Shown here one piece after another: positions 10,043 through 55,600 of a DNA stretch of 64,000 bases. Location of the stretch: positions 62,001 to 126,000 of the IMG/VR virus record IMGVR_UViG_3300050120_000361; one strand, 5' to 3'. The position numbers were made by a program, and so were the translations under genes. Below the pieces are notes generated by a model. It searched no databases, had not been told where the DNA came from, and saw nothing but the letters and a program-made list of their open reading frames with translations. Positions within the stretch are counted from its first letter, which is position 1, and every line of letters begins with the position of its first letter.

Positions 10043-10584
10043 TCGGTTTCAATTGTTTCATAACCAAGGTTCTCTCCACGGAGTATCGCCCATCGTTTGT
10101 CCTCACGCAGGTACGGCCTCTCCACCACCCAGCAATCCATGAATTGTTCCATCAAATGGTCCGCATCCCGTAGTATAACCATTTCCTTGCGGCGCGGGTC
10201 GAGATAGTGCAGCACGTTACCAAGTTTGAGAATTCCCACCGCATGAAACATGGACGGTATCAGGCGCACGGTTAGGTGATATGGTACTATAGGGGTTTCG
10301 ACGAACAGTTCTCCTGGCGCCTCTTCCATCATCACCACGTTCCATATGTGCTCTTTTGGCAATGGTGGGTATGCAGGATTGGATTGAGTTACAAGTCCCA
10401 TTTTCAGTTCGGGAACGCTCATCAATAGCATAGCTTCCACGCGGGTCTCGTCACAGGCCTTGTAATTTGGGTCTTCGCACAGCCTCAACAGATTTTTATC
10501 CTTGAGAATGTTGGCCAACAAGTACACGGTGCACCAGCCTATGGAAGGCTGAACGTATGGTACTTCAAGTTTCAGATGCCTCAC
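10039..10584 (-). CDS. Putative papain-fold cysteine peptidase (C39-like/Josephin-like)
   Basis: LEVPYVQPSIGWC (Gln, then Cys at a helix start), FHAVGI (His), YLDP (Asp). Confidence 0.55.
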   Translation of the reverse strand: MRHLKLEVPYVQPSIGWCTVYLLANILKDKNLLRLCEDPNYKACDETRVEAMLLMSVPELKMGLVTQSNPAYPPLPKEHIWNVVMMEEAPGELFVETPIVPYHLTVRLIPSMFHAVGILKLGNVLHYLDPRRKEMVILRDADHLMEQFMDCWVVERPYLREDKRWAILRGENLGYETIETE

Positions 10585-12527
10585 GCGGCGTCCTCCATTC
10601 CCTCAGTACCACCGTCTCCAATATCCATGAGCAATTCCTTGCGGAGAGCCGTAGACTTGTCGAACCATGTCCTAACCGTGTTGAGGTAGTCCTTGTTCTT
10701 GAGCTTGAACTGTATCAGGCGCTGGTTGTGGAGCATCTCCTCATAGTGCCTGTCCTCAAGGGAGCCGAGACCCTTCTTGTAAGCGATGTCCCACCCCTTG
10801 ATGTTCGGAACGTCCCTGTCGTACTCCTCGAGGGTGTAGTAGTACCTCTCCTGCCCGCCGCTTTCAGGGTCGCCCTTGGAGGCTATGATTATTGGCGACA
10901 CAAGCCTGTAGATGCGCTTGGCAAGGAACAGCTCTGGAAAGTGCATGGCGAAGAAGGTTATCAGAAGCCCGCAGATGTGCGAGCCGTCATGGTCCATATC
11001 CGTGCCGAACACAATCTTTCCGAAGGCGCAGTTCTTTATGTTGTTTTGGGCGTCATTGAACTGCAGGTTCAGTATGGCTATTATCTCTCTGAGCTCCTGG
11101 TTCTCGACAATTTCAGTCTTTGACAGGTTAAGCGTGTTCTTCACCTTGCCCCTAAGCTCATAGGACGCCATATTCCATGGGTTTGCGAACATTGCGAACC
11201 CGTTGGCCGCGGAAGTCCCCTCGAACAGGAACAGCTCGTTCTGCTCCTTGTTGGTGCGGTTAGAGCAGTTGGTGAACTTGCGGCTCTTGGTCTTCTTTAT
11301 CTCTGCGTTAAGCTTCTTCAGAAGCTTCTTCTGCTCGGCGGCGTACTTCAATTGGTAGTACTCCACCATGTTCTCCACTATCTTGCCCTCCTCCAAACGG
11401 TCGAGAAATGACTTGGGCAGCGAAAGGCAGTCGTGAGGTATGGGCGTTACGAGTATGGTCTTTGTCTGGGCGTCGTAGTCTGGGTTGGTAACTGAGGTGG
11501 ACACGAACACGGACACCGCGTCGCGTATGTCGCGTTCGGTTATCAGCTCCATGTCCTTCTTCCTGAACACCTCGAGGAACTTGTCGGTTACCTTCTTCAT
11601 CACCTTCTTGATGTGCGTCCCCTGGGAGCACACGGCGCCGTTTATGAAGCCGTAGTCGTATCCGATGTTCGGGAGTATCACCACATGGTCCCTGAGAGTG
11701 TCGTGGCTCACGCACTGCCCGCGCTGCTCCTCGGTCAGGTGGAGGCTGACGAACTCCTGAAAGTGAGCGAACTTGAATGTCTGGTTCAGCGCCCCTTCGC
11801 CCGCGTCCGTCTCGAACGAGATTTCAAGTCCCGGATTGGCGGCGCACGCGTCGATGCAGCGCTTCTGCATTATCCTTATGGACGCAGTGTCGAGCTCCGC
11901 TATGGCGAAGCGCGAAAGCTCAATCCTGAAGTCCACCTGGGTGTAGTGTCCCTTGTGGGGCTCTACGGTCTCGGACACGAGGTCCTTCATGTTGTTCGCC
12001 CACTCGGTGCGTATCCTGTTCGCGCCGTCGGCAGTCTCTACTGAGAACTTGGTGGAGTATATGTTCGTTAGCTTCGCGCCGAGCCCGTTCAGACCCGCGC
12101 CTTCGCGCTCCTCGGTGTAGTTGCTCGAGGTCTTCAGAAGCCCGAATATCATGGTGGAGACGTACATCTTGAGCACGCCGTGCACCACCACCGGAATGCC
12201 GCCGTCGTCCCTGACGGAAACGGTGCCGTCGCGCATCACCCTGACGGCTATCCTGTTTATGTCGAAGAGCCTGCTCTTCCTGCGGCGCTCGTCTATCGGA
12301 TTGGTCAGTATCTCATCGAAAAGCTTCAGAAGGCCGGCGTTGTAGCCCACCTTGTCCAGCCGCACAATCATGTTGTCAGATGGCTTGTACAGGTTGTACG
12401 GGCCAACAACGGAGTATATGTTGCCTATGTAAACCGCCGGCCTTAGAAGCACATGGTCTATCTCAGACATCAGCGTGTACTTTTCCTCAATGCTCAATTT
12501 ATTATCAATACTGTTATTTTCTGACAT
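10581..12527 (-). CDS. DNA topoisomerase II large (GyrB/ParE-like, T4 gp39+gp60 fused) subunit
   Basis: HVLLRPAVYIG, KLFDEILTN, DDGGIPV, GLNGLGAKLTNIYS, TOPRIM FEGTSA, LRGKVKN, TDMDHDGSHI, YKKGLGS. Confidence 0.95.
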   Translation of the reverse strand: MSENNSIDNKLSIEEKYTLMSEIDHVLLRPAVYIGNIYSVVGPYNLYKPSDNMIVRLDKVGYNAGLLKLFDEILTNPIDERRRKSRLFDINRIAVRVMRDGTVSVRDDGGIPVVVHGVLKMYVSTMIFGLLKTSSNYTEEREGAGLNGLGAKLTNIYSTKFSVETADGANRIRTEWANNMKDLVSETVEPHKGHYTQVDFRIELSRFAIAELDTASIRIMQKRCIDACAANPGLEISFETDAGEGALNQTFKFAHFQEFVSLHLTEEQRGQCVSHDTLRDHVVILPNIGYDYGFINGAVCSQGTHIKKVMKKVTDKFLEVFRKKDMELITERDIRDAVSVFVSTSVTNPDYDAQTKTILVTPIPHDCLSLPKSFLDRLEEGKIVENMVEYYQLKYAAEQKKLLKKLNAEIKKTKSRKFTNCSNRTNKEQNELFLFEGTSAANGFAMFANPWNMASYELRGKVKNTLNLSKTEIVENQELREIIAILNLQFNDAQNNIKNCAFGKIVFGTDMDHDGSHICGLLITFFAMHFPELFLAKRIYRLVSPIIIASKGDPESGGQERYYYTLEEYDRDVPNIKGWDIAYKKGLGSLEDRHYEEMLHNQRLIQFKLKNKDYLNTVRTWFDKSTALRKELLMDIGDGGTEGMEDAA

Positions 12528-14638: not shown

Positions 14639-16603
14639 TTATAGTATGTATCCGTTTTTGTTCTTTCGCCCCCTGCCGCCGCTTGAGTTCCACATCTGCT
14701 CGTGGTTCCGAAGGTGAAAGCCAGTGGGTATCCTGTACACGTTCGCCTGGGCAACCCTTAATTTCTCCTGCTCGTCAAGAAGCTCCTGTGCTATGTCGTT
14801 GCACCGCTGACGCATGTTAGTTTCGGCGTCCGCGAGGAACTCCCTGCTGTACATGTTGCCCGACTTGACGAAATGGGCTATGGTGACGTCCACCATCACG
14901 GTATCGTCATGCCCGTACTGCGCGGCGTAGGTGTCGTTGGCGTTCTTTCCGAAGTTGAGGTACTCCTCAACCGACATGTAGTGCGTTTCGTCGAATGTCT
15001 CGTTTACTATCAGCGAAGAGAAGGACTTGACGCCGACCTTCTTGTTGTACTGGTCCCAGCGTATTCCGCGCTCGTAGTCCTCCTTGCTTGCCCGCATGAA
15101 CTTGGCGAATACGATGTTGTCGAACCACGAGTACGCCTTGTCGAACCTTACCAGGTGGTCTATGTGCGCGAAGAACTCCCCGCCGTAGTTGTTCGTCTCC
15201 ACCACGACGCGAACCTGCGAAGGGTTGAAGTACTTGAGCAGGTCGAGCGTTTTCTGAGCGAAGTCCTCAACTGAAATCTCCTTGTCCCTGAACACGCCAA
15301 TGTTCTTGAACTCTATGCGCTTTTTGGTCCTGTTCCACTCCATCTTCCGTATCTTCAGTACAGAGCTGTCCTGCCCGAGGCCTTCGGCGATGTCTATTCC
15401 CATTATGAAGTAATCCTCCATGAAGTCGTATTCGGTCCCGACCTCAACGCTCTTTCCGTCCTCGGTCTCCGCCATGAAGTGGTTGGCCTTGAACTGTATG
15501 TCGAACAGTTCCCCGAGGTAGTGGTTGTCCTTGGACCAGGCGTTCTTGTTGAGCGTCTGCTCCTGCCTCAGGGATTTCTGTATCTTGACGTTGAAAATGC
15601 TCTTCAGCTGCGTGTCGAATGAGCACTCAAAGCCCATCTCCCACGCCTCGAGGCCCACGTTGGCTATTGTGTCCTGCTTGAACGACTCGTCCCTGCCAGG
15701 AACCTCGTGCCAGTAAATCCTGCTCGATATGAACCTGTTCGTCTTCTCCTGCGAGCCGAGCCAAAGGTCGTAGAACTTGTTCCTGCCGTTCGGGGTGGAG
15801 GCTATTATGCACCTGGACTTGGGATTATTGACAAGGGCCGGGTAGATGTTGTTCCAGAACTTATCCACCTTGGACGCGGGTATGTACGCGAACTCGTCAA
15901 TGAACAGGAAGTCGAGAGAGAAGCCCTGAACCACTGACTCCGACGCGATGCCTATCGATAGCCTGCACCCGTTGTCGAGCGTGAAGCCCCTGGCGTTGAA
16001 TGATATGAAGCCGGGCTGCATGAAGAACGGGAGCCCGTTGAACGCCTCCTTGATCTTCTTGAGTATCTCGTTAACGACCATTTCGGACTGGGCCACTACG
16101 ACGCAGTCCTTATCGAAGTTGAAGCAGCAGAAGTGCACTATCTCAACCACAGTGGTTGTGGTCTTTCCCGACTGGCGGGGAAACATCAGAATGTTCCAGT
16201 TATGCGCCGCGTACTTCGCGAGCAAATCCTCCTGGTACCGGCGAAGGGCAATCTTCTGCCAGCCGTCATTACCGTCCTTGAGCTGCACGAAGTTGTTGCC
16301 GAAAAGCACCTTATCCCCCATGCACATCTCAAGCACCGCCATCTCATCCTCAGTGTACTTGAAGGGCAGGTTTCCCTTGCGGAGGTTGGCGTCCCTCACG
16401 GTCTTAAGGAACGGGGACTCCTTCAGCTTGTAGCCGTCAAGTATGCCAGACTTGGCAAGCTCAACAGACTCGCTGTTCCATACGGACCTGCTCGCCTCGT
16501 CGTTTACGATGATACGAGGGTCAAACACACCGTGGGTTCCCCCAAGCCGCTTGTTCAGCAGGTCATTGGTCCTATTTATGCGTTCCGCGGTCTCGGTGGC
16601 CAT
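14639..16603 (-). CDS. terL: Terminase large subunit (T4 gp17-like)
   Basis: LRRYQ, PRQSGKTTT (Walker A), FLFIDEFAYI (Walker B), STPNGRNKFY, nuclease GIDIAEGLGQDSS, VETNNYG, HDDTVM. Confidence 0.95.
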   Translation of the reverse strand: MATETAERINRTNDLLNKRLGGTHGVFDPRIIVNDEASRSVWNSESVELAKSGILDGYKLKESPFLKTVRDANLRKGNLPFKYTEDEMAVLEMCMGDKVLFGNNFVQLKDGNDGWQKIALRRYQEDLLAKYAAHNWNILMFPRQSGKTTTTVVEIVHFCCFNFDKDCVVVAQSEMVVNEILKKIKEAFNGLPFFMQPGFISFNARGFTLDNGCRLSIGIASESVVQGFSLDFLFIDEFAYIPASKVDKFWNNIYPALVNNPKSRCIIASTPNGRNKFYDLWLGSQEKTNRFISSRIYWHEVPGRDESFKQDTIANVGLEAWEMGFECSFDTQLKSIFNVKIQKSLRQEQTLNKNAWSKDNHYLGELFDIQFKANHFMAETEDGKSVEVGTEYDFMEDYFIMGIDIAEGLGQDSSVLKIRKMEWNRTKKRIEFKNIGVFRDKEISVEDFAQKTLDLLKYFNPSQVRVVVETNNYGGEFFAHIDHLVRFDKAYSWFDNIVFAKFMRASKEDYERGIRWDQYNKKVGVKSFSSLIVNETFDETHYMSVEEYLNFGKNANDTYAAQYGHDDTVMVDVTIAHFVKSGNMYSREFLADAETNMRQRCNDIAQELLDEQEKLRVAQANVYRIPTGFHLRNHEQMWNSSGGRGRKNKNGYIL

Positions 16604-21170: not shown

Positions 21171-22484
21171 CTACCAAACCATAAGCTGGTTGTACTTGTT
21201 GCCGAAATTCGCTATCAGCTCCCTCTTTATGAGCTTGAGGCAGGCGTCCGCGTCATGCATGCTCTTGCTCGCGAGCCTTGCGGCCTCATCGATTTTCTTT
21301 CCCTTGTAGACCAGTGCCTCAAAGACAACCTTCATCCAACCGGCCTTGTACTCGAGGTTCTTCTTCATGAAGGCCTTGAACTCCTCATCGATTTCAATGA
21401 TGTCCGCGTGGGCCTTTTCCGGAGCAATGCCCATTCGCTCCTCAATGCTTGCAACCTTGGACTTTGCGCCATTCGCTGAAACGGCCATGTTCTTGGCCAA
21501 TCCGTAAATCCAGGACATGAACCGCTCATTGTCTGAATAGAAATCGAGCTGCTTCTCCCTTGGCAGCCATGACTCGAGCTCCTCATACATTTGCGCCATT
21601 GCGAGGTCCATGTCCCAACCCCTTATTTCCGCAACGCCCTTTACCGATATGCGTATGCGCCTGTAGTTGCGCGTGCACATAGCCTTAAGCCCGTGGGCCG
21701 GGTCGCTCGCCCGGTACCTCAGCGAGAAAGGCAGCGTGGACGCCTCTTCGACCTCCTCTCCCTTTGCCCGCTCACCGTACTTTTTGACCACCGGCCTGCC
21801 GTTATTGAAGTGGCTGTCGGCTGGGTCAATGCTGTTCTGCTTCTCCACACGCCTGCGCAGCTTGTCTTTCAGGTCCTGTGCGGTTTTTATCTTTTTAGGT
21901 TCTTTGAATTCCTTGACCTTTTTAACCTTGGGTTCTTTAGGCGGCTTGGGAGTCCACGGCTTGTCGTCGCTTATGTACCATCCACTATTGTCTGACCTGA
22001 ACTTCCTGTCAAGGTCAATCAGCATTATGCCGTAAAGTGCGGCGAGTTTGGTTATGGAGTCCCGCTTGCCCTTTGACGTTCCAGCCTCTATGGCGTATAT
22101 GTTCTTGTCACTCGTCCCTGTCGCGTCAACGGCGGCCTGCAGCGGCTTCAGAAGGTAAAGCCTTATGTTCTTGGCGTTCCTCAGGAAGTCGTCAACGAGC
22201 ATGGCGTCCTGAAATATGAAGTTGTCTTCAGGTCTCTGAACCTTCCTTATGCCTCGAGAATTTCCGGACTTGGAGACCTCCTTGTGCGGTTTCGGCTCCT
22301 TGGGCTTAAGGTCTCGGAGCTTCAACTGCCTGGTGGTTATGCCCAATGTTTCCGGGGAAACGTCGGGGAAAGCGTTTTTGTTCAGTATGCTCAACATGCG
22401 CCTGGTATCCTTAACCTCTTTGGCAAGAATTGCAAGCCTCTCCTCGAGGAAATTGCGCATGGTATCCGTGGTGCTCTTTGCCAT
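21171..22484 (-). CDS. XRE-HTH + ECF-type sigma70 factor fusion
   Basis: XRE: NIRLYL..LQAAVDATGTSDKNIYAIEAG...SITKLAALYG. Sigma region 2: ERFMSWIYGLAKNMA. Region 4: VFEALVYKGKKIDEAARLA...CLKLIKREL. Confidence 0.6.
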   Translation of the reverse strand: MAKSTTDTMRNFLEERLAILAKEVKDTRRMLSILNKNAFPDVSPETLGITTRQLKLRDLKPKEPKPHKEVSKSGNSRGIRKVQRPEDNFIFQDAMLVDDFLRNAKNIRLYLLKPLQAAVDATGTSDKNIYAIEAGTSKGKRDSITKLAALYGIMLIDLDRKFRSDNSGWYISDDKPWTPKPPKEPKVKKVKEFKEPKKIKTAQDLKDKLRRRVEKQNSIDPADSHFNNGRPVVKKYGERAKGEEVEEASTLPFSLRYRASDPAHGLKAMCTRNYRRIRISVKGVAEIRGWDMDLAMAQMYEELESWLPREKQLDFYSDNERFMSWIYGLAKNMAVSANGAKSKVASIEERMGIAPEKAHADIIEIDEEFKAFMKKNLEYKAGWMKVVFEALVYKGKKIDEAARLASKSMHDADACLKLIKRELIANFGNKYNQLMVW

Positions 22485-24649: not shown

Positions 24650-25591
24650 TTATCTGAATATCGAGCGCAGTGCCGAAATGCACGCGAAGAATGTGCCGAA
24701 CTTGTTTATGGTGGTCACGTACCTGAACGAGTAGTCGCAGACTATCGCGGCAGCCTTCATGGTGTGCTCGTACTTGCCCTGGCTGTTAAGCCATGTGAAG
24801 TACGGCTCTCCAAGGGATATTAGACACTCGCGCTCCTTGCCCTTGTAGGCGCTCACGGCCTCGTAGAACTTCTGCGCCTCGGCGTTGGACTGTATCAGCT
24901 CGTAGAGCTCCACGTTGGCCGTTCCGTTTTCGGACAGTATAACCACATTGTCCTCGGTAACGTCCCGCTTGCTGTCTATGAATTGCTGCAGTATCACGAG
25001 CAAGTGCCTGAAGTCCGGAAAGTTCATCTGGTATATGAGCTTCAGGCCGCGGTTGTCATACCTGATGTTGTTCTCGTTGCATATGCGTACGGCGTACGAT
25101 ATGTACTTCTTCTGCTGCTCGGTTATCTCCTGGCCCTGGTAAGAGTACTCAACGTTCACGCAGCGCGACTTTATGGCGGAGTTGACGGTTTCTGGCTCGT
25201 TGGTGTTGAACACGAAGTTCACGCTCTTGGCGGTGTCCAGCACGACCTTGAAACCGTCCTGTATCTTGTTGGCAACGTTCTCGCACTCGTCAACGATGAG
25301 GGACTTCTGCCTGCCGAGCACTGAGTGCCCTGACACGAATGGGTACACCTTCTGGCGCATCACCTCCACGTTGAAGTCGTTCGAACCGGACAGGTACAGA
25401 ACGTCGTGCCCGAGCGTAAGGAGCTTGGCCGTGGATGTCTTGCCGGTTCCGGGAGGCCCGTGCTGGAAAAGCCGCCACCCCCTCGCGTCCGTTGTTGTGT
25501 TGGTCAGGAGGGTCTCTATCCTGTTTGGCAGGTAGAGGTCTTTGAGGGATTTCGGGGAATATATCTCAAGCAGTGTCTTCTTTTCGCTCAT
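24650..25591 (-). CDS. Sliding clamp loader AAA+ subunit (T4 gp44/RFC-like)
   Basis: LEIYSPKSL, HGPPGTGKTS, IVDECE, NTN, IKSRC, FPDFRH. Confidence 0.92.
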   Translation of the reverse strand: MSEKKTLLEIYSPKSLKDLYLPNRIETLLTNTTTDARGWRLFQHGPPGTGKTSTAKLLTLGHDVLYLSGSNDFNVEVMRQKVYPFVSGHSVLGRQKSLIVDECENVANKIQDGFKVVLDTAKSVNFVFNTNEPETVNSAIKSRCVNVEYSYQGQEITEQQKKYISYAVRICNENNIRYDNRGLKLIYQMNFPDFRHLLVILQQFIDSKRDVTEDNVVILSENGTANVELYELIQSNAEAQKFYEAVSAYKGKERECLISLGEPYFTWLNSQGKYEHTMKAAAIVCDYSFRYVTTINKFGTFFACISALRSIFR

Positions 25592-26792: not shown

Positions 26793-28379
26793 TTATTTCT
26801 TGTGGTGCATATGCTTAACGGTGGCCTCACCCGCTTCGGCCTTCTGCTTAGGCTCGTATTCGGGACGGCCAACCTTATAGGTATCGAAAGAGTTCTCTTC
26901 CTTTACTTCAACCTTAAGGAAGTCCGCAACCCCACCGTATATGCTCAATTTCAGCTGTATGGAGTCAATAGCCTGAACCTCCTCGAACAGCCTTACGAAC
27001 GGATAGTCATGGTTGAACAGGTAGTCGTGCAGGTCAACGTATGCGGACGTTTTCGAGCCGTCGATGTTGCACTCCTCAATAAGGTTGATGGTCTGGTGGA
27101 GGTGCTTGTAAGTGCTAATCTGGTTCATCGTCACTTGCTGCATAAGGGCCGATTTGCGCTCGCCGCCCTGTATCACGAGCGAGTATATCAGCTCGTTAAC
27201 GTAACCGACTATTCGCTGAATGTTGTCCGCGGGTATCTCCTCGGTGTAGCGGAGCACGAGTTCCTTGTAGGCCTCCTTCTGGGCCTCAATGTCCAGAGCC
27301 AGCGTGTCCACAATCTCATCCCATTTGGTCCAGGCCTTGGCGCCGGTCCTGCGCAAGTTCATGTTAGCCTTGATGAACTTGTAGAAGTCCGGTCCGAGCT
27401 TTTCATCCTTGATTACGCTGTCCAAGCAGCGCATGAAGGAGTCGCCCCCAACAATTTCTTCGCCGCCGCTTTCTTCCATAACGGCTTTGATGAACCTGTC
27501 GCTGTCGTTCTGGTCAATTATGCCTGGATTGTACTTGGGCTTGTTGACCAGTGATGGGTCAGGCGCAACGTGCTCTGTCTGCGGCAATTCGTGCCTGTCT
27601 GGAAGGGCTAGCGGTCCCTCAGCTATGCGGGCGGGGTCGTCATAGTAGTCGAGTATCGAGGGGTATCCGTGAACGGCCTGAAACTCCTTCAATGAGAAAA
27701 CGCTCTCGTAGTATATCAGAGCGAACTTGCTCAAATCGAAGTAGTCGCTTCCGTCGTTCAGGGCCTTGCGGTAGTCATCGTTGTTGTACAGCTTGCTCAT
27801 CATTTTGATGTACTTGCCAGGAAGCTCGATCTGCTCGTAAATCATGCTGTTCAGTTTCAGGAAGTCCTGGTAGCTGAACTGCTTCTTGCGCTTCAGCTCA
27901 TCGATGTCCTTGGCGAACATTACCGGAAAGCTCGTGCTGTTCAGAAGGGTGGTTATTGCGGTGCGTATGGGCATGAACCTGTCAGCTGGCAGGGGAACAA
28001 TGTTCTCTACCATTGTGGTGGTAAGGTCCTTCGGCTTTTCAAGCGTTATTGGCTCCAAATTCCTAATAATGCCGAAGAACCAGTCTATGGCTACGGTCGG
28101 TACGTTCAGGTCCGAAAAGCGCTTGCACACATTCAGAACAACCGGACCTGTCAGACCACCCTGCTGCGAGGTGTAGTCCAGTCCTGTCATGTAGGCCATC
28201 ATGCCAAGCAGTTGAAAGTCCTTCTGCGAGAGCTCGGCGTTTCCGTCTTTGGCGTACAAGCCGTAGATGCGCTCCAATTCCTTTTCGAGTGAACCGTCCT
28301 CGACTCTTTCGGTTATGTCTTTCTTTATCTTCTCGTAGAAGATGTTGGTGTTCTGCTTGGCAGGATTAGTCATTTCCAT
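26793..28379 (-). CDS. Hypothetical protein (528 aa, helical)
   Basis: Long ORF with phage-typical codon use; no motif recognised. Confidence 0.75.
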   Translation of the reverse strand: MEMTNPAKQNTNIFYEKIKKDITERVEDGSLEKELERIYGLYAKDGNAELSQKDFQLLGMMAYMTGLDYTSQQGGLTGPVVLNVCKRFSDLNVPTVAIDWFFGIIRNLEPITLEKPKDLTTTMVENIVPLPADRFMPIRTAITTLLNSTSFPVMFAKDIDELKRKKQFSYQDFLKLNSMIYEQIELPGKYIKMMSKLYNNDDYRKALNDGSDYFDLSKFALIYYESVFSLKEFQAVHGYPSILDYYDDPARIAEGPLALPDRHELPQTEHVAPDPSLVNKPKYNPGIIDQNDSDRFIKAVMEESGGEEIVGGDSFMRCLDSVIKDEKLGPDFYKFIKANMNLRRTGAKAWTKWDEIVDTLALDIEAQKEAYKELVLRYTEEIPADNIQRIVGYVNELIYSLVIQGGERKSALMQQVTMNQISTYKHLHQTINLIEECNIDGSKTSAYVDLHDYLFNHDYPFVRLFEEVQAIDSIQLKLSIYGGVADFLKVEVKEENSFDTYKVGRPEYEPKQKAEAGEATVKHMHHKK

Positions 28380-29043: not shown

Positions 29044-29065
29044 TGTTATCGGTGTTATCGGTCAG

Positions 29066-29842: not shown

Positions 29843-30337
29843 TCACACCTGACTGTCCGCTCCGCCGCCGTAGAGGTCGAACAGCGAGCGCGGCTTGTCA
29901 GGGTTTGCGCGCCTTTCGAATTTTTTGTACTCGTTTGTTCCTATCATGCGCTTAAGCCCGCGGACCACCAAAGCCTTAAGCTTGTCGTGGAGTCGCTCAT
30001 ATGCCTTGGCGTACTCCATGTCGTAGTGGTCGCAGAACACCGTGAAAGCGAAGCCCACGTCGCCTGCGCCCTTTGAGGCGCAGTGCTTTATGTAGGTAAC
30101 GAATGTCAGGTTCAACTTGTTTACGTCGCCAGCGAGCTCGGCCGGGTCCAGCATAAGCGACTCCTTGTCAAGGCTGTCCCGGAGCATTTCCTGGAACTCG
30201 CGGGTCTTCTCCAATACGTCGAAATCGCTGTCCGGATGAACAGCGATTTGGCGGTATATCGAGGCTACGTCCTTCTCGTTCTTTTCGTCGAACTGGTAGG
30301 GCTGCCGCCACGACTCAAATGTATTCTGGTCAGACAC
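29843..30337 (-). CDS. Putative late-transcription coactivator (T4 gp33-like) with C-terminal clamp-binding motif
   Basis: FTVFCDHYDMEYAKAYERLHDKLKALV helical core; tail KPRSLFDLY. Confidence 0.45.
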   Translation of the reverse strand: MSDQNTFESWRQPYQFDEKNEKDVASIYRQIAVHPDSDFDVLEKTREFQEMLRDSLDKESLMLDPAELAGDVNKLNLTFVTYIKHCASKGAGDVGFAFTVFCDHYDMEYAKAYERLHDKLKALVVRGLKRMIGTNEYKKFERRANPDKPRSLFDLYGGGADSQV

Positions 30338-30339
30338 TA

Positions 30340-30966
30340 TCAGGCGGCCTTAGAGTGTGATAGCTCGGCCACGCCGTCCTGCAAAAACTGCTTGTAAGCC
30401 GTCCTGTCCATACTGTAGAAGTTTTCGGCGTAGAACGCGTAACCCTCCCTGTAGCCGTCGACCGCCTTAGCGATGTCCTCGTTGCTTTCAATGAATTCTG
30501 ATATGTCAAGGCTGAGAAGAACCGGGACGTTAACGAAAAGCGGCACAAGCCAGAAGAACTCCATTACGAAGCCGTCCGCAGAAACCTTCATGTTCCGAGC
30601 GCCCTTCTTAACGTACATGTCGAATTTGGACGTGTTCATCAGCACGAAGTAGAACATCTTCATCAGCTTGTTGCGCTCGGCCTTGCTGTCCGTTACGGAA
30701 AGGGAAGCCAGCATGAACATCACGGACCACTCGTCGTACACGTTCTTTGCGATGCTCGCGCCGATGTTCATGTCAAGGAACTTGGCCGATGTGAGCAGCA
30801 GCTGGTCAGCCACCTGGCTCGGCCTTATCGAGGAGAGCAGCGCCTGGTTGTTGGTTACGAATGCCTCGAGGTGCTCGCTCGTGCGCAGCTTTTCGCCGGA
30901 GTGGATGAAATCCTTCTGCTTGGGCATTCTCCCTATAATGGCGTCCAATAGTTCTGATGTTGTCAT
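30340..30966 (-). CDS. Hypothetical protein
   Basis: 208-aa helical ORF. Confidence 0.7.
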   Translation of the reverse strand: MTTSELLDAIIGRMPKQKDFIHSGEKLRTSEHLEAFVTNNQALLSSIRPSQVADQLLLTSAKFLDMNIGASIAKNVYDEWSVMFMLASLSVTDSKAERNKLMKMFYFVLMNTSKFDMYVKKGARNMKVSADGFVMEFFWLVPLFVNVPVLLSLDISEFIESNEDIAKAVDGYREGYAFYAENFYSMDRTAYKQFLQDGVAELSHSKAA

Positions 30967-31635: not shown

Positions 31636-31881
31636 TTATTCGTTCTTAGTCTCGTAGCAGTCAGAGCACATGTCGTCCTCATCCGACCAGCAATCAACCC
31701 CATACCAACAGCCGCAGGTCTCGCAGTGGAATGTAGTATTGTTTATAAAGTCCCAATCCTCGCCTGCAAAGTCCAATGAATTCATGCCAGGCCAGAGCGT
31801 GTCCAGGCACGAGTCGAGAGTGTCGCATGAGCCATCAAGGGTTTCGCAGAGCGCGTTCGCGTCGAAGCCGGGATGTCTCAT
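31636..31881 (-). CDS. Small acidic Zn-ribbon protein
   Basis: CETCGCW...CSDC; ATG overlaps the UvsW stop (TGATG). Confidence 0.65.
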   Translation of the reverse strand: MRHPGFDANALCETLDGSCDTLDSCLDTLWPGMNSLDFAGEDWDFINNTTFHCETCGCWYGVDCWSDEDDMCSDCYETKNE

Positions 31882-33401
31882 CAGGCGGCTGTCTTCAAAT
31901 ACACGTCGTACTCGACGCATGGGTGTTTTTCGGCCTCGTATATCTTGTTCCGTGCCGACGCGTGGTTCTTAAACGAGCATCCTGGTATCAGGTCCTGATA
32001 GTCCCATACATTTGCGAAAAGCTTGGCAAGGTATATCCTGATTGACCTTCCAACGGATTGCTTAATGCGTATCTCCGACCTACCTCCGTCCGGAAAATGG
32101 ACGTGGGCTACGGAAGGTACGGACACGCCGGTGGACATCGTCTCGTATGTAGCCACGAGCACGCAGTCGTCGCGGCCCTTTACAAGGTTCAGTATCTCGT
32201 CCCTTCCTTTCACGCTTCCGTGTATTATCTCCACAATACGTTCTGGACACCTCTCCTGTATAAAGTCCTTAAGCATCTTGCAGTAGTCCACGCTTTCAAC
32301 AAGTACGAGGTGGTTCAGCTCATGACTGTTTATCAGCTTGCACATAAGGTTTGTGCGCTGCTCGTGCGAGTGAAACCATGCCTTTTCTATGTGGTATCTC
32401 TCAATGCCTGTAAAGCCGCTTTCCTTAAGGTTCTTGCTCATATCGTTCTCCTCGCCGGAGTAGTGTATGCGCACCTTGTTTATCTTAACAGGGCATGCGT
32501 TGCCATCGGCTATGAGTTCCCAAGTCTTTTTCACAAGCACTCTGGGGCCGAACATGCTCACAATGTTAAGGTAATCGAGGGTCTTCCATTCGGGAAACGA
32601 ACCGGTCATTCCGAAAAAGTACTCCGTATGGAAGCACTTGGCGTATATCCCGTTGCGTATGGAATTCGACTTGGCTCCGTGAACCTCATCGCATATCACC
32701 GCGAAAAAGTCGTCGAAATACTCAGCATCATAATCCGAAAGCGAGTTGTAGACGCCAACCACTATTTGAGCATCCTCTATCCTTTTGGAGCCTGAGAATA
32801 TTGTCTCTACCTTGAATGGACTGTCGCTGAATTCATCGTATTCCTTGAAGTCGGCCTGAAGCTGCTTTGCGAGGAGTTGCCGTGGAACTATTATCAGAAG
32901 CTTCTTACCCTTGGGCACCACGTGATCAATCATGTACCTGCAGTATAGGTAGGTTATGAGCGTCTTGCCCCCAGAAGTCCCAACCTCAATGCGCGCAGTC
33001 TTGAAGAGTATCGCCCTGTATGCGGACTCCATCTGGTAAAGGTACTCAGCCTTCCAGATGTCATACTTCTCCGGCAGTATGAGCGACTCCATGTATTCGT
33101 TGAAGTGCGACCGAGTCAGCTTGTTATTGTAGAATATGTGGTCGTTCTCTATCTCAAGCTTGTATGGAAGCGCTGGACCCACTTTCTGCCTGATATCCTG
33201 CCAAAATTGGAAAGGCACGAATGTCGAATTTATAAAGTATGACTGGCTTACGTTCTTGTTAAGCGACTTGATAAAGGGCTTGTACTCCGTCCTACTCACC
33301 ACATTCTCAATTAGCTTTAAGTGCGGAAGGTCCTCGGGTTTCAGGTCCCAAATCTGTATGAAATTCTTGTGGTTCTTGCCCTCAACAGCTGTCAGTCTCA
33401 T
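31881..33401 (-). CDS. uvsW: UvsW-like SF2 DNA helicase
   Basis: YQ, GTSGGKT, IIVPRQLL, ICDEVH, GMTGS, IHG, ATYETMSTGVSVP, QSVGRSIR. Confidence 0.88.
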   Translation of the reverse strand: MRLTAVEGKNHKNFIQIWDLKPEDLPHLKLIENVVSRTEYKPFIKSLNKNVSQSYFINSTFVPFQFWQDIRQKVGPALPYKLEIENDHIFYNNKLTRSHFNEYMESLILPEKYDIWKAEYLYQMESAYRAILFKTARIEVGTSGGKTLITYLYCRYMIDHVVPKGKKLLIIVPRQLLAKQLQADFKEYDEFSDSPFKVETIFSGSKRIEDAQIVVGVYNSLSDYDAEYFDDFFAVICDEVHGAKSNSIRNGIYAKCFHTEYFFGMTGSFPEWKTLDYLNIVSMFGPRVLVKKTWELIADGNACPVKINKVRIHYSGEENDMSKNLKESGFTGIERYHIEKAWFHSHEQRTNLMCKLINSHELNHLVLVESVDYCKMLKDFIQERCPERIVEIIHGSVKGRDEILNLVKGRDDCVLVATYETMSTGVSVPSVAHVHFPDGGRSEIRIKQSVGRSIRIYLAKLFANVWDYQDLIPGCSFKNHASARNKIYEAEKHPCVEYDVYLKTAA

Positions 33402-33478: not shown

Positions 33479-34759
33479 TTAAGAATTAAGGATGTCCTCA
33501 ACATCCGGAGACTTTTGCGTTATCTCAGCGCTTGTAGCCGGTGCCTCAGCCGCTGGAGCGGATTGTACGGGCGCCTCAGCCGCTGGCGGCGCCTGTTGGG
33601 TTTGGGCTGCAGGTGGCGGCGTTGGCGCCTGAACTGGTGATGCTCCTGCCGCGAGCACGGAGTCAACGAGCTCGGTTGGCGCGGAGTTCTTCAGGATGTC
33701 CTGCGCCGAAGCGCCTGAAAGCGTGGTGGCGCTGTCGCTTCCCTCGGTCGAGCCTGTGGCGACCGTGCCGTAGGACTTGATTTCCTGGATGGAGGTGGCG
33801 TTCAGGATAACCGGAATTATCTCGTCAATCTTCAAAGCCAAGTCGATAAGGTACTTGTTGGTGTCCTCAGTGTTCTTAGGGTCGTTCAACGCCTTGTAGG
33901 CGAAGTAGTTGTGGATTGAAAGCTCGGGCTTGGTCATGTTGGCGATGAGGGCGCTGAAGAAGTCGTCAAGCCCATCAGCCAATGAGCCGTCGGCGTTCTT
34001 GTCGGCCTGCGTGAAGGTGTGCTCCCTGCCGTCCTCCAACTTCACGTAAGCGCCGCGAATGTTCTTCGTGAAGGCGGACTTCGTGAAGTCGCGCCCCTTG
34101 CGGCCGTCGTAGTCGGCCTCGTCGCATTGGATGAAAAGCGCGCTCGAGCCGAACGAGTCAAAGATGTCCTCCTTCTCAAACCCCTGCTTCTGCTTGGCCT
34201 CGGACGGGTTCAGCTTCTCATCAATCAGGTTGGCGATTGTCGCGTTTGGTCCGAATGTCGAGAAGGTGAAGAGTCGGATGATGCCTATCTCAGCGGCATC
34301 ATCCGACTCAAGCACCTGTACCACTGAACAGCCCTGATTTGTAACGCTCAAAAAGTCGTCGATTTTCTGTATGGCCAGGGCGTCGCCGTTCTTTTTCAGA
34401 GCGTGGAGCTGGAAGAACGCGTCGAGAACCTTGTCGGTTTTCGCGTTGTTTGATGAAACTGATTGGAATGTCTTGCCGCGGCGGGTAGGGTCTGGAAGGT
34501 TCTTGTATACCTTGCGGTGTATGATGTCATTGTTGCCCGCAAGGGTGGTTGACTCCAGGTTGCGGAGCAATTTGACCGTGTAGGATTTGCCTACCTGGGG
34601 TTCAAAGAAGATTAGGGAGTAGTCCATTCCACCACCAAGAGGAATATCCTCCGCCTTAACGGCCTGTGAAACGTCTGTTTTTGTTGTGAGCATGGCGGCC
34701 TTCAAGGCGTCCATGTTGTTTGCGGCTGGTTGCTGCGTGGTCGAATTCTGATCTGACAT
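33479..34759 (-). CDS. Single-stranded DNA-binding protein (T4 gp32-like)
   Basis: IRLFTFSTFG...LIDEKLNP...EDIFD..G...DFTKSAF; long A/P/Q-rich linker and acidic tail; A-rich leader and a downstream terminator, as expected for a highly expressed gene. Confidence 0.7.
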   Translation of the reverse strand: MSDQNSTTQQPAANNMDALKAAMLTTKTDVSQAVKAEDIPLGGGMDYSLIFFEPQVGKSYTVKLLRNLESTTLAGNNDIIHRKVYKNLPDPTRRGKTFQSVSSNNAKTDKVLDAFFQLHALKKNGDALAIQKIDDFLSVTNQGCSVVQVLESDDAAEIGIIRLFTFSTFGPNATIANLIDEKLNPSEAKQKQGFEKEDIFDSFGSSALFIQCDEADYDGRKGRDFTKSAFTKNIRGAYVKLEDGREHTFTQADKNADGSLADGLDDFFSALIANMTKPELSIHNYFAYKALNDPKNTEDTNKYLIDLALKIDEIIPVILNATSIQEIKSYGTVATGSTEGSDSATTLSGASAQDILKNSAPTELVDSVLAAGASPVQAPTPPPAAQTQQAPPAAEAPVQSAPAAEAPATSAEITQKSPDVEDILNS

Positions 34760-52603: not shown

Positions 52604-55600
52604 ATGACGCTCAGAACCAAGCACAGAAGTGACGAAGTAGGCCAGGTAGACGAAAGGCTCGCCATAAGCGTACAGCTTGGAATACCCACCTATACTGCCG
52701 ACCCAACTCCGTCTCCAACGGACGCCGAGGGCGGCTACGCCAACACCCCAATCTACTGGAACACCGCTCTCGGCTCGCTTCGCCTGAACCCGGGAGGGCT
52801 GGGCTGGCAGTCACTGGGCGCCGTTTCGCCCGGGTCGGGCATAGACATAACCTCGGGGATAGCCTCATTGGGCGCCCCGGTCACAAGGGACACGGACCTT
52901 GACGGCGTGCACAAGACGCGCATCGGGGACATCACCGGCGGCAAGTCCTACGTGTCCATAGACCCGGCGAATTCTCAGGCAGTGCTGCAGTCGCTTTCGG
53001 GCGGAGTTTCAGCGTTTTCAGGCGCGTACGGCGGAAACGCCCAGATGGGCGTTTCGCAGCCAGGGGCCCACTCCTACGTTTACGTGGACCCGTCCCAAAT
53101 GGTGGTATCGGACACGATAAACAGCAGGGGCCTGATAAACGGAGGCGACTATGAGGCGAACTTTGTCGCGAGGTCGCTCGTTACATACCAGTGGGCCAGC
53201 GCTCAGAACGCCCTTTACATGCCAAAGACCGGCGGCACGTTCACTGGCGACGTTCAGATAACAACCCCGCCTGTCAACGGGACCTCGGCGATAAACAAGA
53301 ACTACGCCGACAGCATAGCCATGGGCGTCGTGTGGATAGGCGCCGACACCGACTCCGGAAGCAACGTGACGCTCTCTGGCGAGCAGGTGCTTTCCGGGTA
53401 CCTTACGTCCAACTCGCGCGCGTTCCTTCACGGGCAGACCAACGCCGCCAATAACGGCGTTTGGCTGACGAGCGGAGGCGCGTGGACGAGAACATCCGAC
53501 GCCTCGACGCCTTCCCAGCTCGTGAGGTGCGCGGTCATAATAGACGCGGGTAACAATGCGGGTCAGACCTGGTTAAACACCAATTCCTCAATAGTTCTTG
53601 GCACCACGGCCATAACGTTCACGCGCGCGGGCGGGCTTAACTACATCAACGGCACGGGCATAGCGATAGCCGCTTCGACAATATCTCTTGACCTCACGTA
53701 TACTGACGCGAGATACGCATTGAACTCTTGGGGCATTCAGTCCTTCACAACATCAGGCAGCAGCGGCACGCCTACGTTCTCGGGCGGCACATTGAATGTG
53801 CCAGCCTATACCCTCACAGGTCTCGGCGGACAGGCCGCACTGGTTTCGGGAACCAACATAAAGAACATAAACTCCGCGTCACTGCTCGGCGGAGGTAACA
53901 TTGCGCTGCAGACGCCATTGGTTGCGGGAACGGACTATTTGACACCCACGGGGTCCGCTGCTGGATTGGTTTCATTCCCGACATTCAACCAGAACACAAC
54001 CGGCAACTCTGCCACCTCTACAAAGCTTGCGACAGGCCGCAGCATACAGGGAGTGCTTTTCGACGGAACGTCGGACATTAGCATCCTGAACGGTACCGGC
54101 CTTGTGCGCATGGCCGGCACCTCCATATCCTACGACAATTCAACATACATTACCTCGGCAGGCGCTGACGGCCTTTACCTGCCACTGCACGGGACCGCGG
54201 ACAACTCCGCGCTGTGGAACGGCCTGGCGTACTACGGCGGCGGCCTCGTTGCATCGGTGCTCTACGCGATGGCCTACGACGGGACCAATAACAGGCAGGG
54301 GCCCGCTAACGCCGCGCAGATGCAGGGATGGCTCGGGCTCGGCTCCGCGGCGTACCTGAACGCATCTGCCTCCGCCGCCGCCAACGCGGTTGTGCAGCGG
54401 GACGGCTCGGGATACATAAACAACACATACATACTCACCACTGACGACTCTTCTTCCGCACTGGGGTACATGGTTGGCAAGTCTCCATCGGACAACTACC
54501 ACAGGACGTACGCGGTCGGCACGGTTCAGTCATGGCTGGGCCTTGGCGCGAGGGCGTACGACTCCGCGGCATACCTTCCGCTTCACGCCGAAGCAGACAA
54601 CTCGGCCCTGTGGAACGGCAACAGCTACACCCCTGTGTCTTACAGCGGGGCCCTCCAATACATTCTCGGATACGACCAGTCGGCTTCCACTTGGAAACCC
54701 TCCACTGCGGCCTCCATTTCCTATTTCCTTGGGCTCGGGTCCAACGCCTTCGACTCCGCCGCGTACCTTCCGCTGCACTCGACGGCTGATGCGGCTACGC
54801 TTTGGGGCGGGCAGCAGGCAAACCTTTCAACGACGGTGTCATCGATAGCCAATATGGTGGCCCAGCAGCCAGGCGGCTCTGTTGCGGTGGCCTCATTGGG
54901 TCAGGTCCAGGGATGGCTGGGACTCGGCTCTAACGCCTACAATTCGACAGCCTACCTGCCGCTTCACGCAAAGGCAGACAGTTCGGCAACCGCCGACATG
55001 GGGTACGCGATGGCTGTACAGGACTTTGACAGGCCGATGTCCGTTGTTACCCCCAACTTCAACGGCGGCCACCAGATGCGTTTGGACTTTGTGAACTCTG
55101 CCGTGATAGGCGGTGCAACCGGCAACTTCGGCGGCGTGGTCACGCTCATTCCCTACGACGGTAACACCGCATCGACCGGCGACGCGTCATACCAGCTCGG
55201 TTTCGTGGGGACCGGGGCAAACGGCTCAGGAACGCCGCGCATGGTCATCCGCAAGGGGATAGACGCGACATGGAACGGGTGGCATGAAATGCTCACGGAC
55301 TCCAACTACAGCTCGTACTCCCCTACACTCACAGGCGGCGGAGCATCTGGCGTTTGGGGTATTAGCGTGACTGGAAACGCGGCAACCGCGAACTCAGCCA
55401 CAACGGCGGGCAGCGCCGGGAACTCCACGCTCTGGAACGGGTACGACAACCAGTTCGCGAGCGGCGTGAGGTCGGACATAGCGCCATCATCTATTAACGG
55501 CTTCTACTCCAACGGGCACGTGTACCAGTTCGCGGCGAACCAGGTGCAGTCATTCCTCGGGCTCGGAACCGCGGCCTACCTCAACGCTACTACTGCCGGA

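What the first reader, a model, noticed from the sequence alone, without database searches (positions are those of the whole stretch)
29843..30337. gp33-like protein with an RB69-type sliding-clamp motif (KPRSLFDLY)
Seen: a helical core resembling T4 gp33 and a near-terminal SLFDLY. Known: the RB69 polymerase clamp-binding tail is KASLFDMF, and T4 gp33/gp55 use related tails to couple late transcription to the gp45 clamp. Inference: clamp-coupled late transcription extends to this Bacteroidota jumbo phage. With the clamp loader, sigma fusion and CCGATAA motif it outlines a divergent transcription-control system.
Basis: partly seen in the sequence, partly recalled or inferred. Interest (0 to 1): 0.6.

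Follow-up and report, generated by a model that had tools for sequence, protein, structure and literature searches.

The report
Clamp-tailed candidate late-transcription co-activator
A small helical phage protein carries a conserved sliding-clamp-docking peptide at its tail and, with a T4-type late sigma factor and a PCNA-like clamp in the same genome, probably couples late transcription to DNA replication as T4 gp33 does, though it shows no sequence kinship to gp33.

Summary
The ORF is real: window 29843-30337, minus strand, 164 aa, GTG start. It ends in ...KPRSLFDLYGGGADSQV. It belongs to a family of at least 78 clusters of ~150-aa proteins. 58 of 81 members carry [ST]-h-F-[DE]-h in the last 25 residues, against about 1.8% expected by chance. 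This is the RB69 polymerase pattern (KKASLFDMFDF, checked here).

The 208.5-kb genome also encodes:
- a gp44-like clamp loader, inside the window;
- a PCNA-fold clamp, outside the window, between the two halves of a split PolB;
- a gp55-family late sigma (phrog_234, E 4.5e-7) ending in SIDVLF, which resembles T4 gp55's SLDFLY.

No canonical gp33 (PF16805, phrog_254) is detectable here or in the cultured relatives PTm1 and PAU.

Verdict: the clamp-binding tail is well supported. A gp33-like co-activator role is the best explanation (~0.5) but rests on inference. I file it as a new variant of a known kind.

The parts
29843..30337 (-). Target ORF, 164 aa (P0001), GTG start 2 nt after the stop of the upstream gene. 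Member of a family of at least 78 clusters of ~150-aa phage proteins.
29870..29887 (-). SLFDLY (residues 151-156): candidate sliding-clamp-binding motif of the RB69 type. It follows a ~6-residue linker, is followed by 8 residues, and is modelled as a short helix (152-156).
29906..30223 (-). All-helical core, residues 39-144, pLDDT 83-98. Residues 66-143 (nt 29909-30142) are the part that superposes on the whole ordered region of T4 gp33 (residues 32-102).
30224..30337 (-). N-terminal ~38 residues modelled with low confidence. They include the conserved PYxFDExNEKD...SIYRQI stretch of close homologues and have no counterpart in gp33.
30340..30966 (-). Upstream 208-aa ORF, syntenic in all relatives examined, function unknown. 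A gp59-like identity was looked for and not found.
31881..33401 (-). UvsW-like DEAD/ResIII helicase. The order SSB - helicase - target family is also found in Tenacibaculum phage PTm1.
33479..34759 (-). Probable gp32-type single-stranded-DNA-binding protein: weak similarity to the annotated PTm1 SSB, with an acidic/Ala-Pro-rich tail.
24650..25591 (-). gp44-type AAA+ clamp-loader subunit. It implies a phage-encoded clamp for the tail to bind.

Best explanation
The ORF encodes a clamp-tethered co-activator of late transcription, a functional counterpart of T4 gp33. Proposed mechanism:
1. The C-terminal SLFDLY peptide, on a short basic linker, docks into the hydrophobic pocket of the phage's own PCNA-like sliding clamp. 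This step is inferred from motif identity, family-wide conservation, and the presence of a clamp and clamp loader.
2. The helical core binds host RNA polymerase, most likely the beta-flap tip helix. This step is inferred only from a weak structural resemblance and from the vacant gp33 role.
3. The polymerase carries the phage's minimal gp55-type sigma, which has its own clamp-binding tail (SIDVLF). The sigma assignment is shown at profile level.
4. Clamps loaded on replicating or nicked phage DNA therefore slide to late promoters and activate them, tying late gene expression to replication.
For: - Motif: SLFDLY at residues 151-156. The consensus [ST]-L-F-D-L-h is at or near the C-terminus in 58 of 81 members against ~1.8% background. 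The pattern matches the RB69 gp43 clamp peptide KKASLFDMFDF.
- One clamp accepting both motif variants has a precedent. RB69 gp43 carries SLFDMF and RB69 gp55 carries SLDFLY. Here the target carries SLFDLY and the sigma carries SIDVLF.
- Partners are encoded in the same genome. The clamp loader matches phrog_168 at E 8e-38. The 325-aa clamp has a PCNA fold, with TM 0.61-0.69 by query and 0.77-0.88 by row to PCNA_N/PCNA_C clusters, and has 93 relatives. The 121-aa ORF matches phrog_234 'late sigma transcription factor' at E 4.5e-7, the PHROG that T4 gp55 hits at 3e-69, and Sigma70_r2 at E 0.01. Its IS-I-[DE]-x-L-F tail is conserved in three orthologues.
- The gp33 role is otherwise vacant. PF16805 and phrog_254 find nothing in this genome, in PTm1 or in PAU.
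- In cultured phage PTm1, the family homologue gp041 (A2 profile E 8.5e-5), the gp55-like ORF and PolB all end in [ST]-[FY]-x-x-[LIM]-F. That is the same trio that bears clamp motifs in T4.
- Gene position beside the SSB and helicase genes recalls the T4 order 32-59-33.
- Literature: the gp33 clamp motif is essential for activation (PMC7892883). 'Group 2' jumbo phages, including PTm1, are said to carry a minimal sigma plus a gp33 orthologue (PMC7824862).
Against: - No sequence or profile similarity to gp33. hhalign gives probability 0.1-0.2% in every mode tried, and there is no Pfam or PHROG hit.
- Foldseek finds nothing in the PDB.
- The protein is 50% longer than gp33. It has an extra N-terminal region and long helix, and it is much less acidic: median pI 5.5 against 4.4 for gp33, with a basic stretch before the motif.
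- Neither clamp binding nor RNAP binding has been demonstrated.
- The gene sits in a replication/recombination cluster, which fits a replisome role equally well.
- This phage's own PolB tail (...ENFLLNIKQLKF) does not carry the same motif.
Confidence: 0.5

Rival explanations
1. It is a clamp-binding replisome or recombination accessory, for example an adaptor that recruits a helicase, nuclease, or the split polymerase to the clamp, with no role in transcription.
For: - The gene lies in a strictly syntenic block of replication genes: SSB, UvsW-like helicase, clamp loader, dNMP kinase, 5'-3' exonuclease.
- The PolB of this clade is split and lacks the SLFDL-type tail, so an adaptor is conceivable.
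- Many clamp clients are replication or repair proteins (PMC9690074, listed).
- The stretch before the motif is basic, with a median charge of +4. That would suit DNA contact.
Against: - No similarity to any known replication factor in Pfam, PHROGs or the PDB.
- PolB has its own conserved C-terminal hydrophobic tail.
- In PTm1 it is PolB, the sigma and the homologue that share a tail type. This mirrors the T4 gp43/gp55/gp33 set.
- T4 gp33 itself sits among replication genes, so position does not discriminate.
Confidence: 0.25
2. It is a clamp regulator or competitor: a small protein that occupies the clamp's client pocket to time polymerase or sigma access, or to unload clamps, without contacting RNAP.
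For: - Small size and a single conserved docking peptide.
- The core has no enzymatic signature.
Against: - A well-conserved ~105-residue folded core (pLDDT above 90) implies a second specific partner.
- No precedent could be tested here.
- It does not explain why the gp33 role is otherwise vacant in genomes that keep a gp55-type sigma with a clamp tail.
Confidence: 0.1
3. The C-terminal peptide is not a clamp ligand. It is a short amphipathic tail that binds another partner (SSB, helicase, RNAP itself) or serves folding or oligomerisation, and the resemblance to RB69 is coincidental.
For: - The motif is only 5-6 residues long.
- This phage's polymerase does not share it.
- The clamp here is PCNA-like and shows no sequence similarity to gp45, so pocket specificity is unknown.
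Against: - The position, spacing and chemistry match experimentally defined T4/RB69 motifs.
- The motif is kept across a family that is otherwise only ~20-30% identical.
- The gp55-like sigma carries the sister variant at the same place.
Confidence: 0.12

Closest known systems
T4 gp33 late-transcription co-activator (Pfam PF16805 Trans_coact, phrog_254; PDB 3TBI, 7D7D)
   Same: - A small helical protein with a short linker and a clamp-binding motif at the C-terminus.
- It co-occurs with a gp55-type sigma, a clamp and a gp44-type loader.
- The gene lies near the SSB gene.
- gp33 is among the three best structural matches, with its whole ordered region covered.
   Different: - No detectable sequence or profile homology.
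- 164 aa against 112 aa, with an extra N-terminal region and helix.
- Motif of RB69-polymerase type (S-L-F-D-L-Y) rather than T-L-D-F-L-L, and followed by 8 more residues.
- Mildly acidic rather than strongly acidic.
- Beta-flap binding is unproven.
RB69/T4 DNA polymerase gp43 C-terminal clamp-binding peptide
   Same: The pattern S-L-F-D-[LM]-[FY] near the C-terminus is the same as RB69 KKASLFDMFDF.
   Different: It is attached to a small non-enzymatic helical protein, not to a polymerase. The clamp partner here is a 325-aa PCNA-fold protein that gp45 Pfam models do not recognise.
T4 gp55 late sigma factor (phrog_234)
   Same: Also a small helical protein with a C-terminal clamp motif followed by a few residues.
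   Different: - The target does not match phrog_234 or Sigma70_r2.
- gp55 (7d7c_F is in the PDB) is not among the 50 best structural matches.
- A separate 121-aa ORF (L010:16639-17001) is the gp55 homologue.
Tenacibaculum phage PTm1 gp041 (YP_009873725, annotated hypothetical protein)
   Same: - Member of the same family by profile (E 8.5e-5) and by predicted structure (BFVD probability 0.99).
- Same position after the SSB and helicase genes.
- C-terminal TFESLF tail.
   Different: No pairwise BLAST similarity to the target. Its tail is of the T4 register (h-acid-x-L-F). The host is a cultured Bacteroidota fish pathogen, so it is experimentally tractable.

Membership tests
T4 gp33 family (Pfam PF16805 / phrog_254) | Sequence match to the family profile | tested here: not met
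   The target has no Pfam or PHROG hit at E<=0.1, nor at E<=10. Six-frame searches of the genome with PF16805 and phrog_254 find nothing at E<=10. hhalign of the 77-sequence family against 32 gp33 sequences gives probability 0.1-0.2%.
T4 gp33 family (Pfam PF16805 / phrog_254) | Five-helix fold that clamps the RNAP beta-flap tip helix | tested here: inconclusive
T4 gp33 family (Pfam PF16805 / phrog_254) | C-terminal sliding-clamp-binding motif on a short linker | tested here: met
   SLFDLY lies at residues 151-156, after the last helix ends at 144. It is conserved across the family.
T4 gp33 family (Pfam PF16805 / phrog_254) | Physical binding to the RNA polymerase beta flap | not testable with these tools
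It needs a two-hybrid or pull-down assay with a Bacteroidota beta-flap.
T4-type clamp-activated late transcription system (gp45/gp44-62/gp55/gp33) | Phage-encoded sliding clamp and clamp loader | tested here: met
   The loader matches phrog_168 at E 8e-38 and Gp44_lid. The clamp has a PCNA fold by the ESM Atlas structure search, although gp45 Pfam models do not match it.
T4-type clamp-activated late transcription system (gp45/gp44-62/gp55/gp33) | gp55-type minimal sigma bearing a C-terminal clamp motif | tested here: met
   L010:16639-17001 matches phrog_234 at E 4.5e-7 and Sigma70_r2 at E 0.01. Its tail SIDVLFANHQ resembles T4 SLDFLYEAND and is conserved in three orthologues.
T4-type clamp-activated late transcription system (gp45/gp44-62/gp55/gp33) | Late promoters consisting of a -10-like element only (T4: TATAAATA) | tested here: inconclusive
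   12 of 21 copies of ATAAATA lie within 80 nt upstream of a same-strand start, a 13-fold enrichment. A-rich, SD-poor leaders could produce the same signal, and no transcript ends are available.
T4/RB69-type clamp-binding motif proteins | S/T-h-(F-D or D-x)-L-aromatic/aliphatic peptide at the extreme C-terminus, conserved in orthologues | tested here: met
   The reference tails were read from the T4 and RB69 records.
T4/RB69-type clamp-binding motif proteins | Demonstrated binding of the peptide to the clamp pocket | not testable with these tools
   It needs ITC, pull-down or a co-crystal with the 325-aa clamp.
gp55-type late sigma (phrog_234), considered for the target itself | Sigma region-2-like domain | tested here: not met
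   The target has no phrog_234 or Sigma70_r2 hit. gp55 is absent from the 50 best structural matches although it is present in the PDB.

The most novel reading that the evidence does not exclude
The family is a gp33 analogue that is not recognisably related to gp33, through either extreme divergence or independent invention. It serves a large, mostly uncultured clade of ~175-225-kb T4-superfamily phages (relatives of PTm1, probably infecting Bacteroidota). Sliding-clamp-activated late transcription with a PCNA-like clamp would then be an ancient, widespread strategy rather than a peculiarity of T4-like Straboviridae. The extra N-terminal module and the basic linker would add a function that gp33 lacks, for example DNA contact.
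Probability: 0.35. Interest if true: 0.7.

Novelty: new variant of a known kind. Interest (0 to 1): 0.55.

Why it matters
Transcription activation by a sliding clamp has been dissected mechanistically essentially only in T4. A Mu/beta-clamp case was reported only in 2025-26 (PMC12867686).

If this family is the co-activator, the same logic would operate with a PCNA-like clamp, a 120-aa minimal sigma and a structurally different adaptor, in phages of Bacteroidota. Those hosts have an unusual RNA polymerase and unusual promoters.

The finding also gives a concrete functional hypothesis for a 'hypothetical protein' present in at least 78 sequence clusters and in the cultured phage PTm1, where it can be tested. 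Finally, it defines a clamp-docking motif ([ST]-L-F-D-L-h) that can be used to find other clamp clients in these genomes.

Tried and rejected
- Co-folding of the clamp (residues 1-300, 51-row alignment) with target residues 120-164 gave 'no answer' (score 0.00, controls not run). It is evidence neither for nor against binding.
- Sequence routes to gp33 all failed: Pfam and PHROGs on the target; PF16805 and phrog_254 against the six frames of the genome; hhalign in local, low-mact and global modes, on the whole family and on its C-terminal half; a PDB profile search.
- tblastn of the target and of the clamp against 50,697 phage records found no match. megablast of 12 kb found no match. The viral contigs pattern scan found no relative.
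- The 300-aa ORF directly upstream of the clamp loader was considered as the clamp and rejected. By reading its sequence, it has hydrophobic N-terminal segments and a coiled-coil-like tail and no family hit. The gp45 Pfam models (PF02916, PF09116) hit nothing.
- The 208-aa upstream ORF was tested as a gp59 analogue, which would mirror the T4 order 59-33. It has no Pfam or PHROG hit, and the Atlas model was too poor to use (pLDDT 0.44).
- The target as the gp55 homologue was rejected (see membership test).
- A weak phmmer hit of T4 gp33 to an internal stretch of the 648-aa ORF (E 0.012 in a 239-protein database) was dismissed, because that ORF is the topoisomerase II large subunit.
- PAU shows no match to the family profile at E<=1.

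Full report
**The object**

Window 29843-30337 on the minus strand is an open frame of 164 codons. It starts at a GTG that lies two bases after the stop of the upstream 208-aa gene. The product (P0001) ends in ...NPDKPRSLFDLYGGGADSQV. SLFDLY is residues 151-156, encoded by nt 29870-29887.

The window is bases 62001-126000 of a 208,538-bp virus record with direct terminal repeats and 52.9% G+C. Leaders are A-rich (41% A against 23% genome-wide), and only 32 of 214 ORFs have a Shine-Dalgarno-like core. By established knowledge this is typical of Bacteroidota and their phages. The closest cultured relatives by clamp loader are Sphingomonas phage PAU and Tenacibaculum phages PTm1 and PTm5, at 27-29% identity. 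The host is therefore probably, but not demonstrably, a member of the Bacteroidota.

**The family and its tail**

The target matches no Pfam or PHROG family. The word-based search found three relatives at 53-60% identity. A profile search of 1.84 billion cluster representatives found 78 relatives, 56 of them at E<=1e-10, and nearly all 140-170 aa long.

The family is only ~20-30% identical to the target outside its close relatives. Even so, 58 of 81 sequences carry [ST]-h-[FLMIY]-[DENQS]-h within the last 25 residues, and most of the others carry near-variants. The position-specific majorities among those 58 are T/S, L (43), F (53), D (41), L (44), then I/V/F/L. Zero to five residues usually follow. 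The same pattern occurs about 0.018 times per 25-residue window in this proteome. In the phage's 239 ORFs, only the target has the RB69-type pattern in its last 20 residues.

I read the reference motifs from the public records:
- T4 gp33 ends in TNTLDFLL.
- T4 gp55 ends in SPSLDFLYEAND and T4 gp43 ends in KASLDFLFG.
- RB69 gp43 ends in KKASLFDMFDF.
- RB69 gp55 ends in SPSLDFLYEDDN.

RB69 also shows that proteins of one phage can carry both registers of the motif.

**The partners**

*Clamp loader.* A gp44-type clamp loader lies in the window at 24650-25591 (phrog_168 E 8e-38).

*Clamp.* The clamp is not next to the loader. The 300-aa ORF upstream of the loader looks like a membrane/coiled-coil protein, and the gp45 Pfam models hit nothing. 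A family-B polymerase is split into two ORFs at genome positions 173942-175474 and 177486-178757. A 325-aa ORF lies between them (176466-177443). The ESM Atlas model of that ORF superposes on PCNA_N/PCNA_C, Rad9 and Hus1 clusters over residues ~4-295, with TM 0.61-0.69 by query and up to 0.88 by row. The ORF has 93 relatives at 41-74% identity, several on contigs of 160-197 kb. I take it to be the phage's sliding clamp.

*Sigma.* Three kilobases further on, a 121-aa ORF (180639-181004) matches phrog_234 'late sigma transcription factor' at E 4.5e-7. T4 gp55 hits the same PHROG at 3e-69. The ORF is also the only place in the genome that matches Sigma70_r2 (E 0.01), and it was the best, though insignificant, phmmer hit of T4 gp55. 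It ends in HISIDVLFANHQ. Three orthologues end in ISIESLFSNDN, ISIDALFASEKS and ISIDALFDSDNNK. Compare SLDFLYEAND in T4.

*No canonical gp33.* The genome therefore has the clamp, the loader and a gp55-type sigma with a clamp tail. It has no recognisable gp33: PF16805 and phrog_254 are silent here and in PTm1 and PAU.

**Structure**

With four sequences the AF2 model was mediocre (pLDDT 68.7). With the 77-sequence alignment it is confident (pLDDT 86.9, with values above 95 across residues 41-130). It shows:
- eight helices between residues 39 and 144;
- a linker;
- a one-turn helix on SLFDL;
- a poorly defined N-terminal ~38 residues.

Three things make this match noteworthy. The hypothesis was stated before the search. 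The whole ordered part of gp33 is covered. The alignment ends a few residues before the clamp motif in both proteins.

Among predicted viral structures, the best matches are uncharacterised proteins, including one from PTm1 (probability 0.99).

**The cultured relative**

The family profile finds PTm1 gp041 (E 8.5e-5). It is a 153-aa 'hypothetical protein' lying directly after the annotated SSB and DNA helicase genes. The target occupies the same neighbourhood: a probable SSB at 33479-34759 and a helicase at 31881-33401. This also recalls the T4 order 32-59-33.

gp041 ends in LTFESLFTK. The PTm1 gp55-like ORF ends in FSYSTIFTDDV. The PTm1 PolB C-terminal piece ends in PSFKNMFKKK. Three proteins ending in [ST]-[FY]-x-x-[LIM]-F are the same trio (polymerase, sigma, co-activator) that carries clamp motifs in T4.

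This is the strongest independent hint that the family sits in the gp33 position of the network, although it is still only pattern evidence. In the present phage the PolB tail (...ENFLLNIKQLKF, conserved in orthologues) is of a different type.

**Synteny**

The block helicase - (small ORFs) - ~208 aa - target - ~230-250 aa - ~180 aa - ~520 aa - ~300 aa - clamp loader - ... - dNMP kinase - 5'-3' exonuclease - ... - terminase is preserved even around distant family members. Context therefore tracks the phage clade and gives no independent functional vote.

**Interpretation**

*Shown:*
- a real gene;
- a conserved terminal peptide of the T4/RB69 clamp-binding type;
- a clamp, a loader and a gp55-family sigma with a similar tail in the same genome;
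- no canonical gp33.

*Inferred:*
- that the peptide binds this PCNA-like clamp;
- that the helical core binds RNA polymerase at the flap.

Published work gives the background. The gp33 motif is essential for clamp-dependent activation, and gp33 clamps onto the flap-tip helix (PMC7892883). A comparative study states in general terms that 'group 2' jumbo phages, a group that includes PTm1, have a minimal sigma and a gp33 orthologue (PMC7824862). I could not check which proteins that study meant, because no supplement is held.

I put about 0.85 on clamp binding and about 0.5 on the full gp33-like mechanism. The main rival, at about 0.25, is a clamp-tethered replication or recombination accessory.

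**Comparison and novelty**

The protein works like gp33 in architecture and in genomic company. It fails the sequence test for membership, and it differs in size, charge (median pI 5.5 against 4.4), N-terminal extension and motif register. I file it as a new variant of a known kind.

Noticed in passing
L010:16639-17001 (+) = genome 180639-181004, outside the window: A 121-aa gp55-family minimal late sigma (phrog_234 E 4.5e-7; Sigma70_r2 E 0.01). It ends in SIDVLFANHQ, a T4-type clamp-binding tail that is conserved in orthologues and has counterparts in PAU (IRFDMIFNESV) and PTm1 (SYSTIFTDDV).
   Followed up: yes
L010:9942-14754 (+) = genome 173942-178757: The family-B DNA polymerase is split into two ORFs (510 and 423 aa). 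Between them lie a 287-aa acidic, Pro/Glu/Thr-repeat protein and the 325-aa PCNA-fold clamp. The same arrangement is seen in three related contigs, where a dUTPase-like gene takes part of the gap.
   Followed up: partly
L024:8596-9057, L027:1390-1752, L030:1387-2373 (Tenacibaculum phage PTm1): In PTm1, the target-family homologue gp041, the gp55-like ORF and the PolB C-terminal piece all end in [ST]-[FY]-x-x-[LIM]-F followed by 2-4 residues. This suggests a lineage-specific version of the clamp-binding motif shared by the same trio as in T4.
   Followed up: partly
whole genome; e.g. window 14635, 7136, 4388, 48001 (genome 76635, 69136, 66388, 110001): ATAAATA, the core of the T4 late promoter TATAAATA, occurs 21 times. 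12 of those lie within 80 nt upstream of a same-strand start codon, often only 11-19 nt before the ATG. It may be a late -10-like element or simply part of the A-rich leaders.
   Followed up: partly
whole genome; in the window e.g. 29052-29061, 31028, 38335, 45991: CCGATAA occurs 44 times, 12 of them within 80 nt upstream of a same-strand start. Several copies (CCGATAACA...ATG) sit 9-30 nt before the start codon, twice in tandem before the 190-aa gene. That position suits a leader or translation-initiation element at least as well as a promoter.
   Followed up: partly
window 21171-22484 (-) and 26793-28379 (-): No sigma-70 region 2 or 4 Pfam match lies anywhere in the window in the six-frame searches. 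The 437-aa and 528-aa ORFs near the finding have no Pfam hit even at E<=10. A 'sigma fusion' inside the window could not be confirmed.
   Followed up: partly
L005:8623-10698 (-) = genome 28620-30698: A 692-aa phage ORF contains a strong ribosome-modulation-factor (RMF) domain at residues 425-458 (PF04957, E 8e-23), which is unusual in a phage protein of this size.
   Followed up: no
L006:1742-5827 (-) = genome 41739-45827: A 1362-aa ORF combines a calcineurin-like phosphoesterase N-terminus with SMC_N/AAA_23. It looks like a fused Mre11-Rad50 (T4 gp47-gp46) nuclease.
   Followed up: no
L009:17736-19562 (+) = genome 161736-163565: A 609-aa ORF of unknown function ends in ...NSSLDAILEESGLLK. This is a T4-type S-L-D-x-I-L pattern near the C-terminus and makes it a possible further clamp client.
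   Followed up: no
window 10581-12527 (-), 4574-6043 (-), 14639-16603 (-), 52604-59407 (+): Other annotations made on the way: T4-type topoisomerase II large subunit (phrog_543, E 7e-133) and a second topo II subunit (phrog_551); the large terminase; and a 2267-aa fibre protein with a C-terminal Peptidase_S74 intramolecular chaperone domain.
   Followed up: partly
whole genome: Only 15% of ORFs have a Shine-Dalgarno-like core, and leaders are 41% A. No tRNA gene was found in the 144 kb outside the window. Both points fit a Bacteroidota-type host, but the host was not determined.
   Followed up: partly
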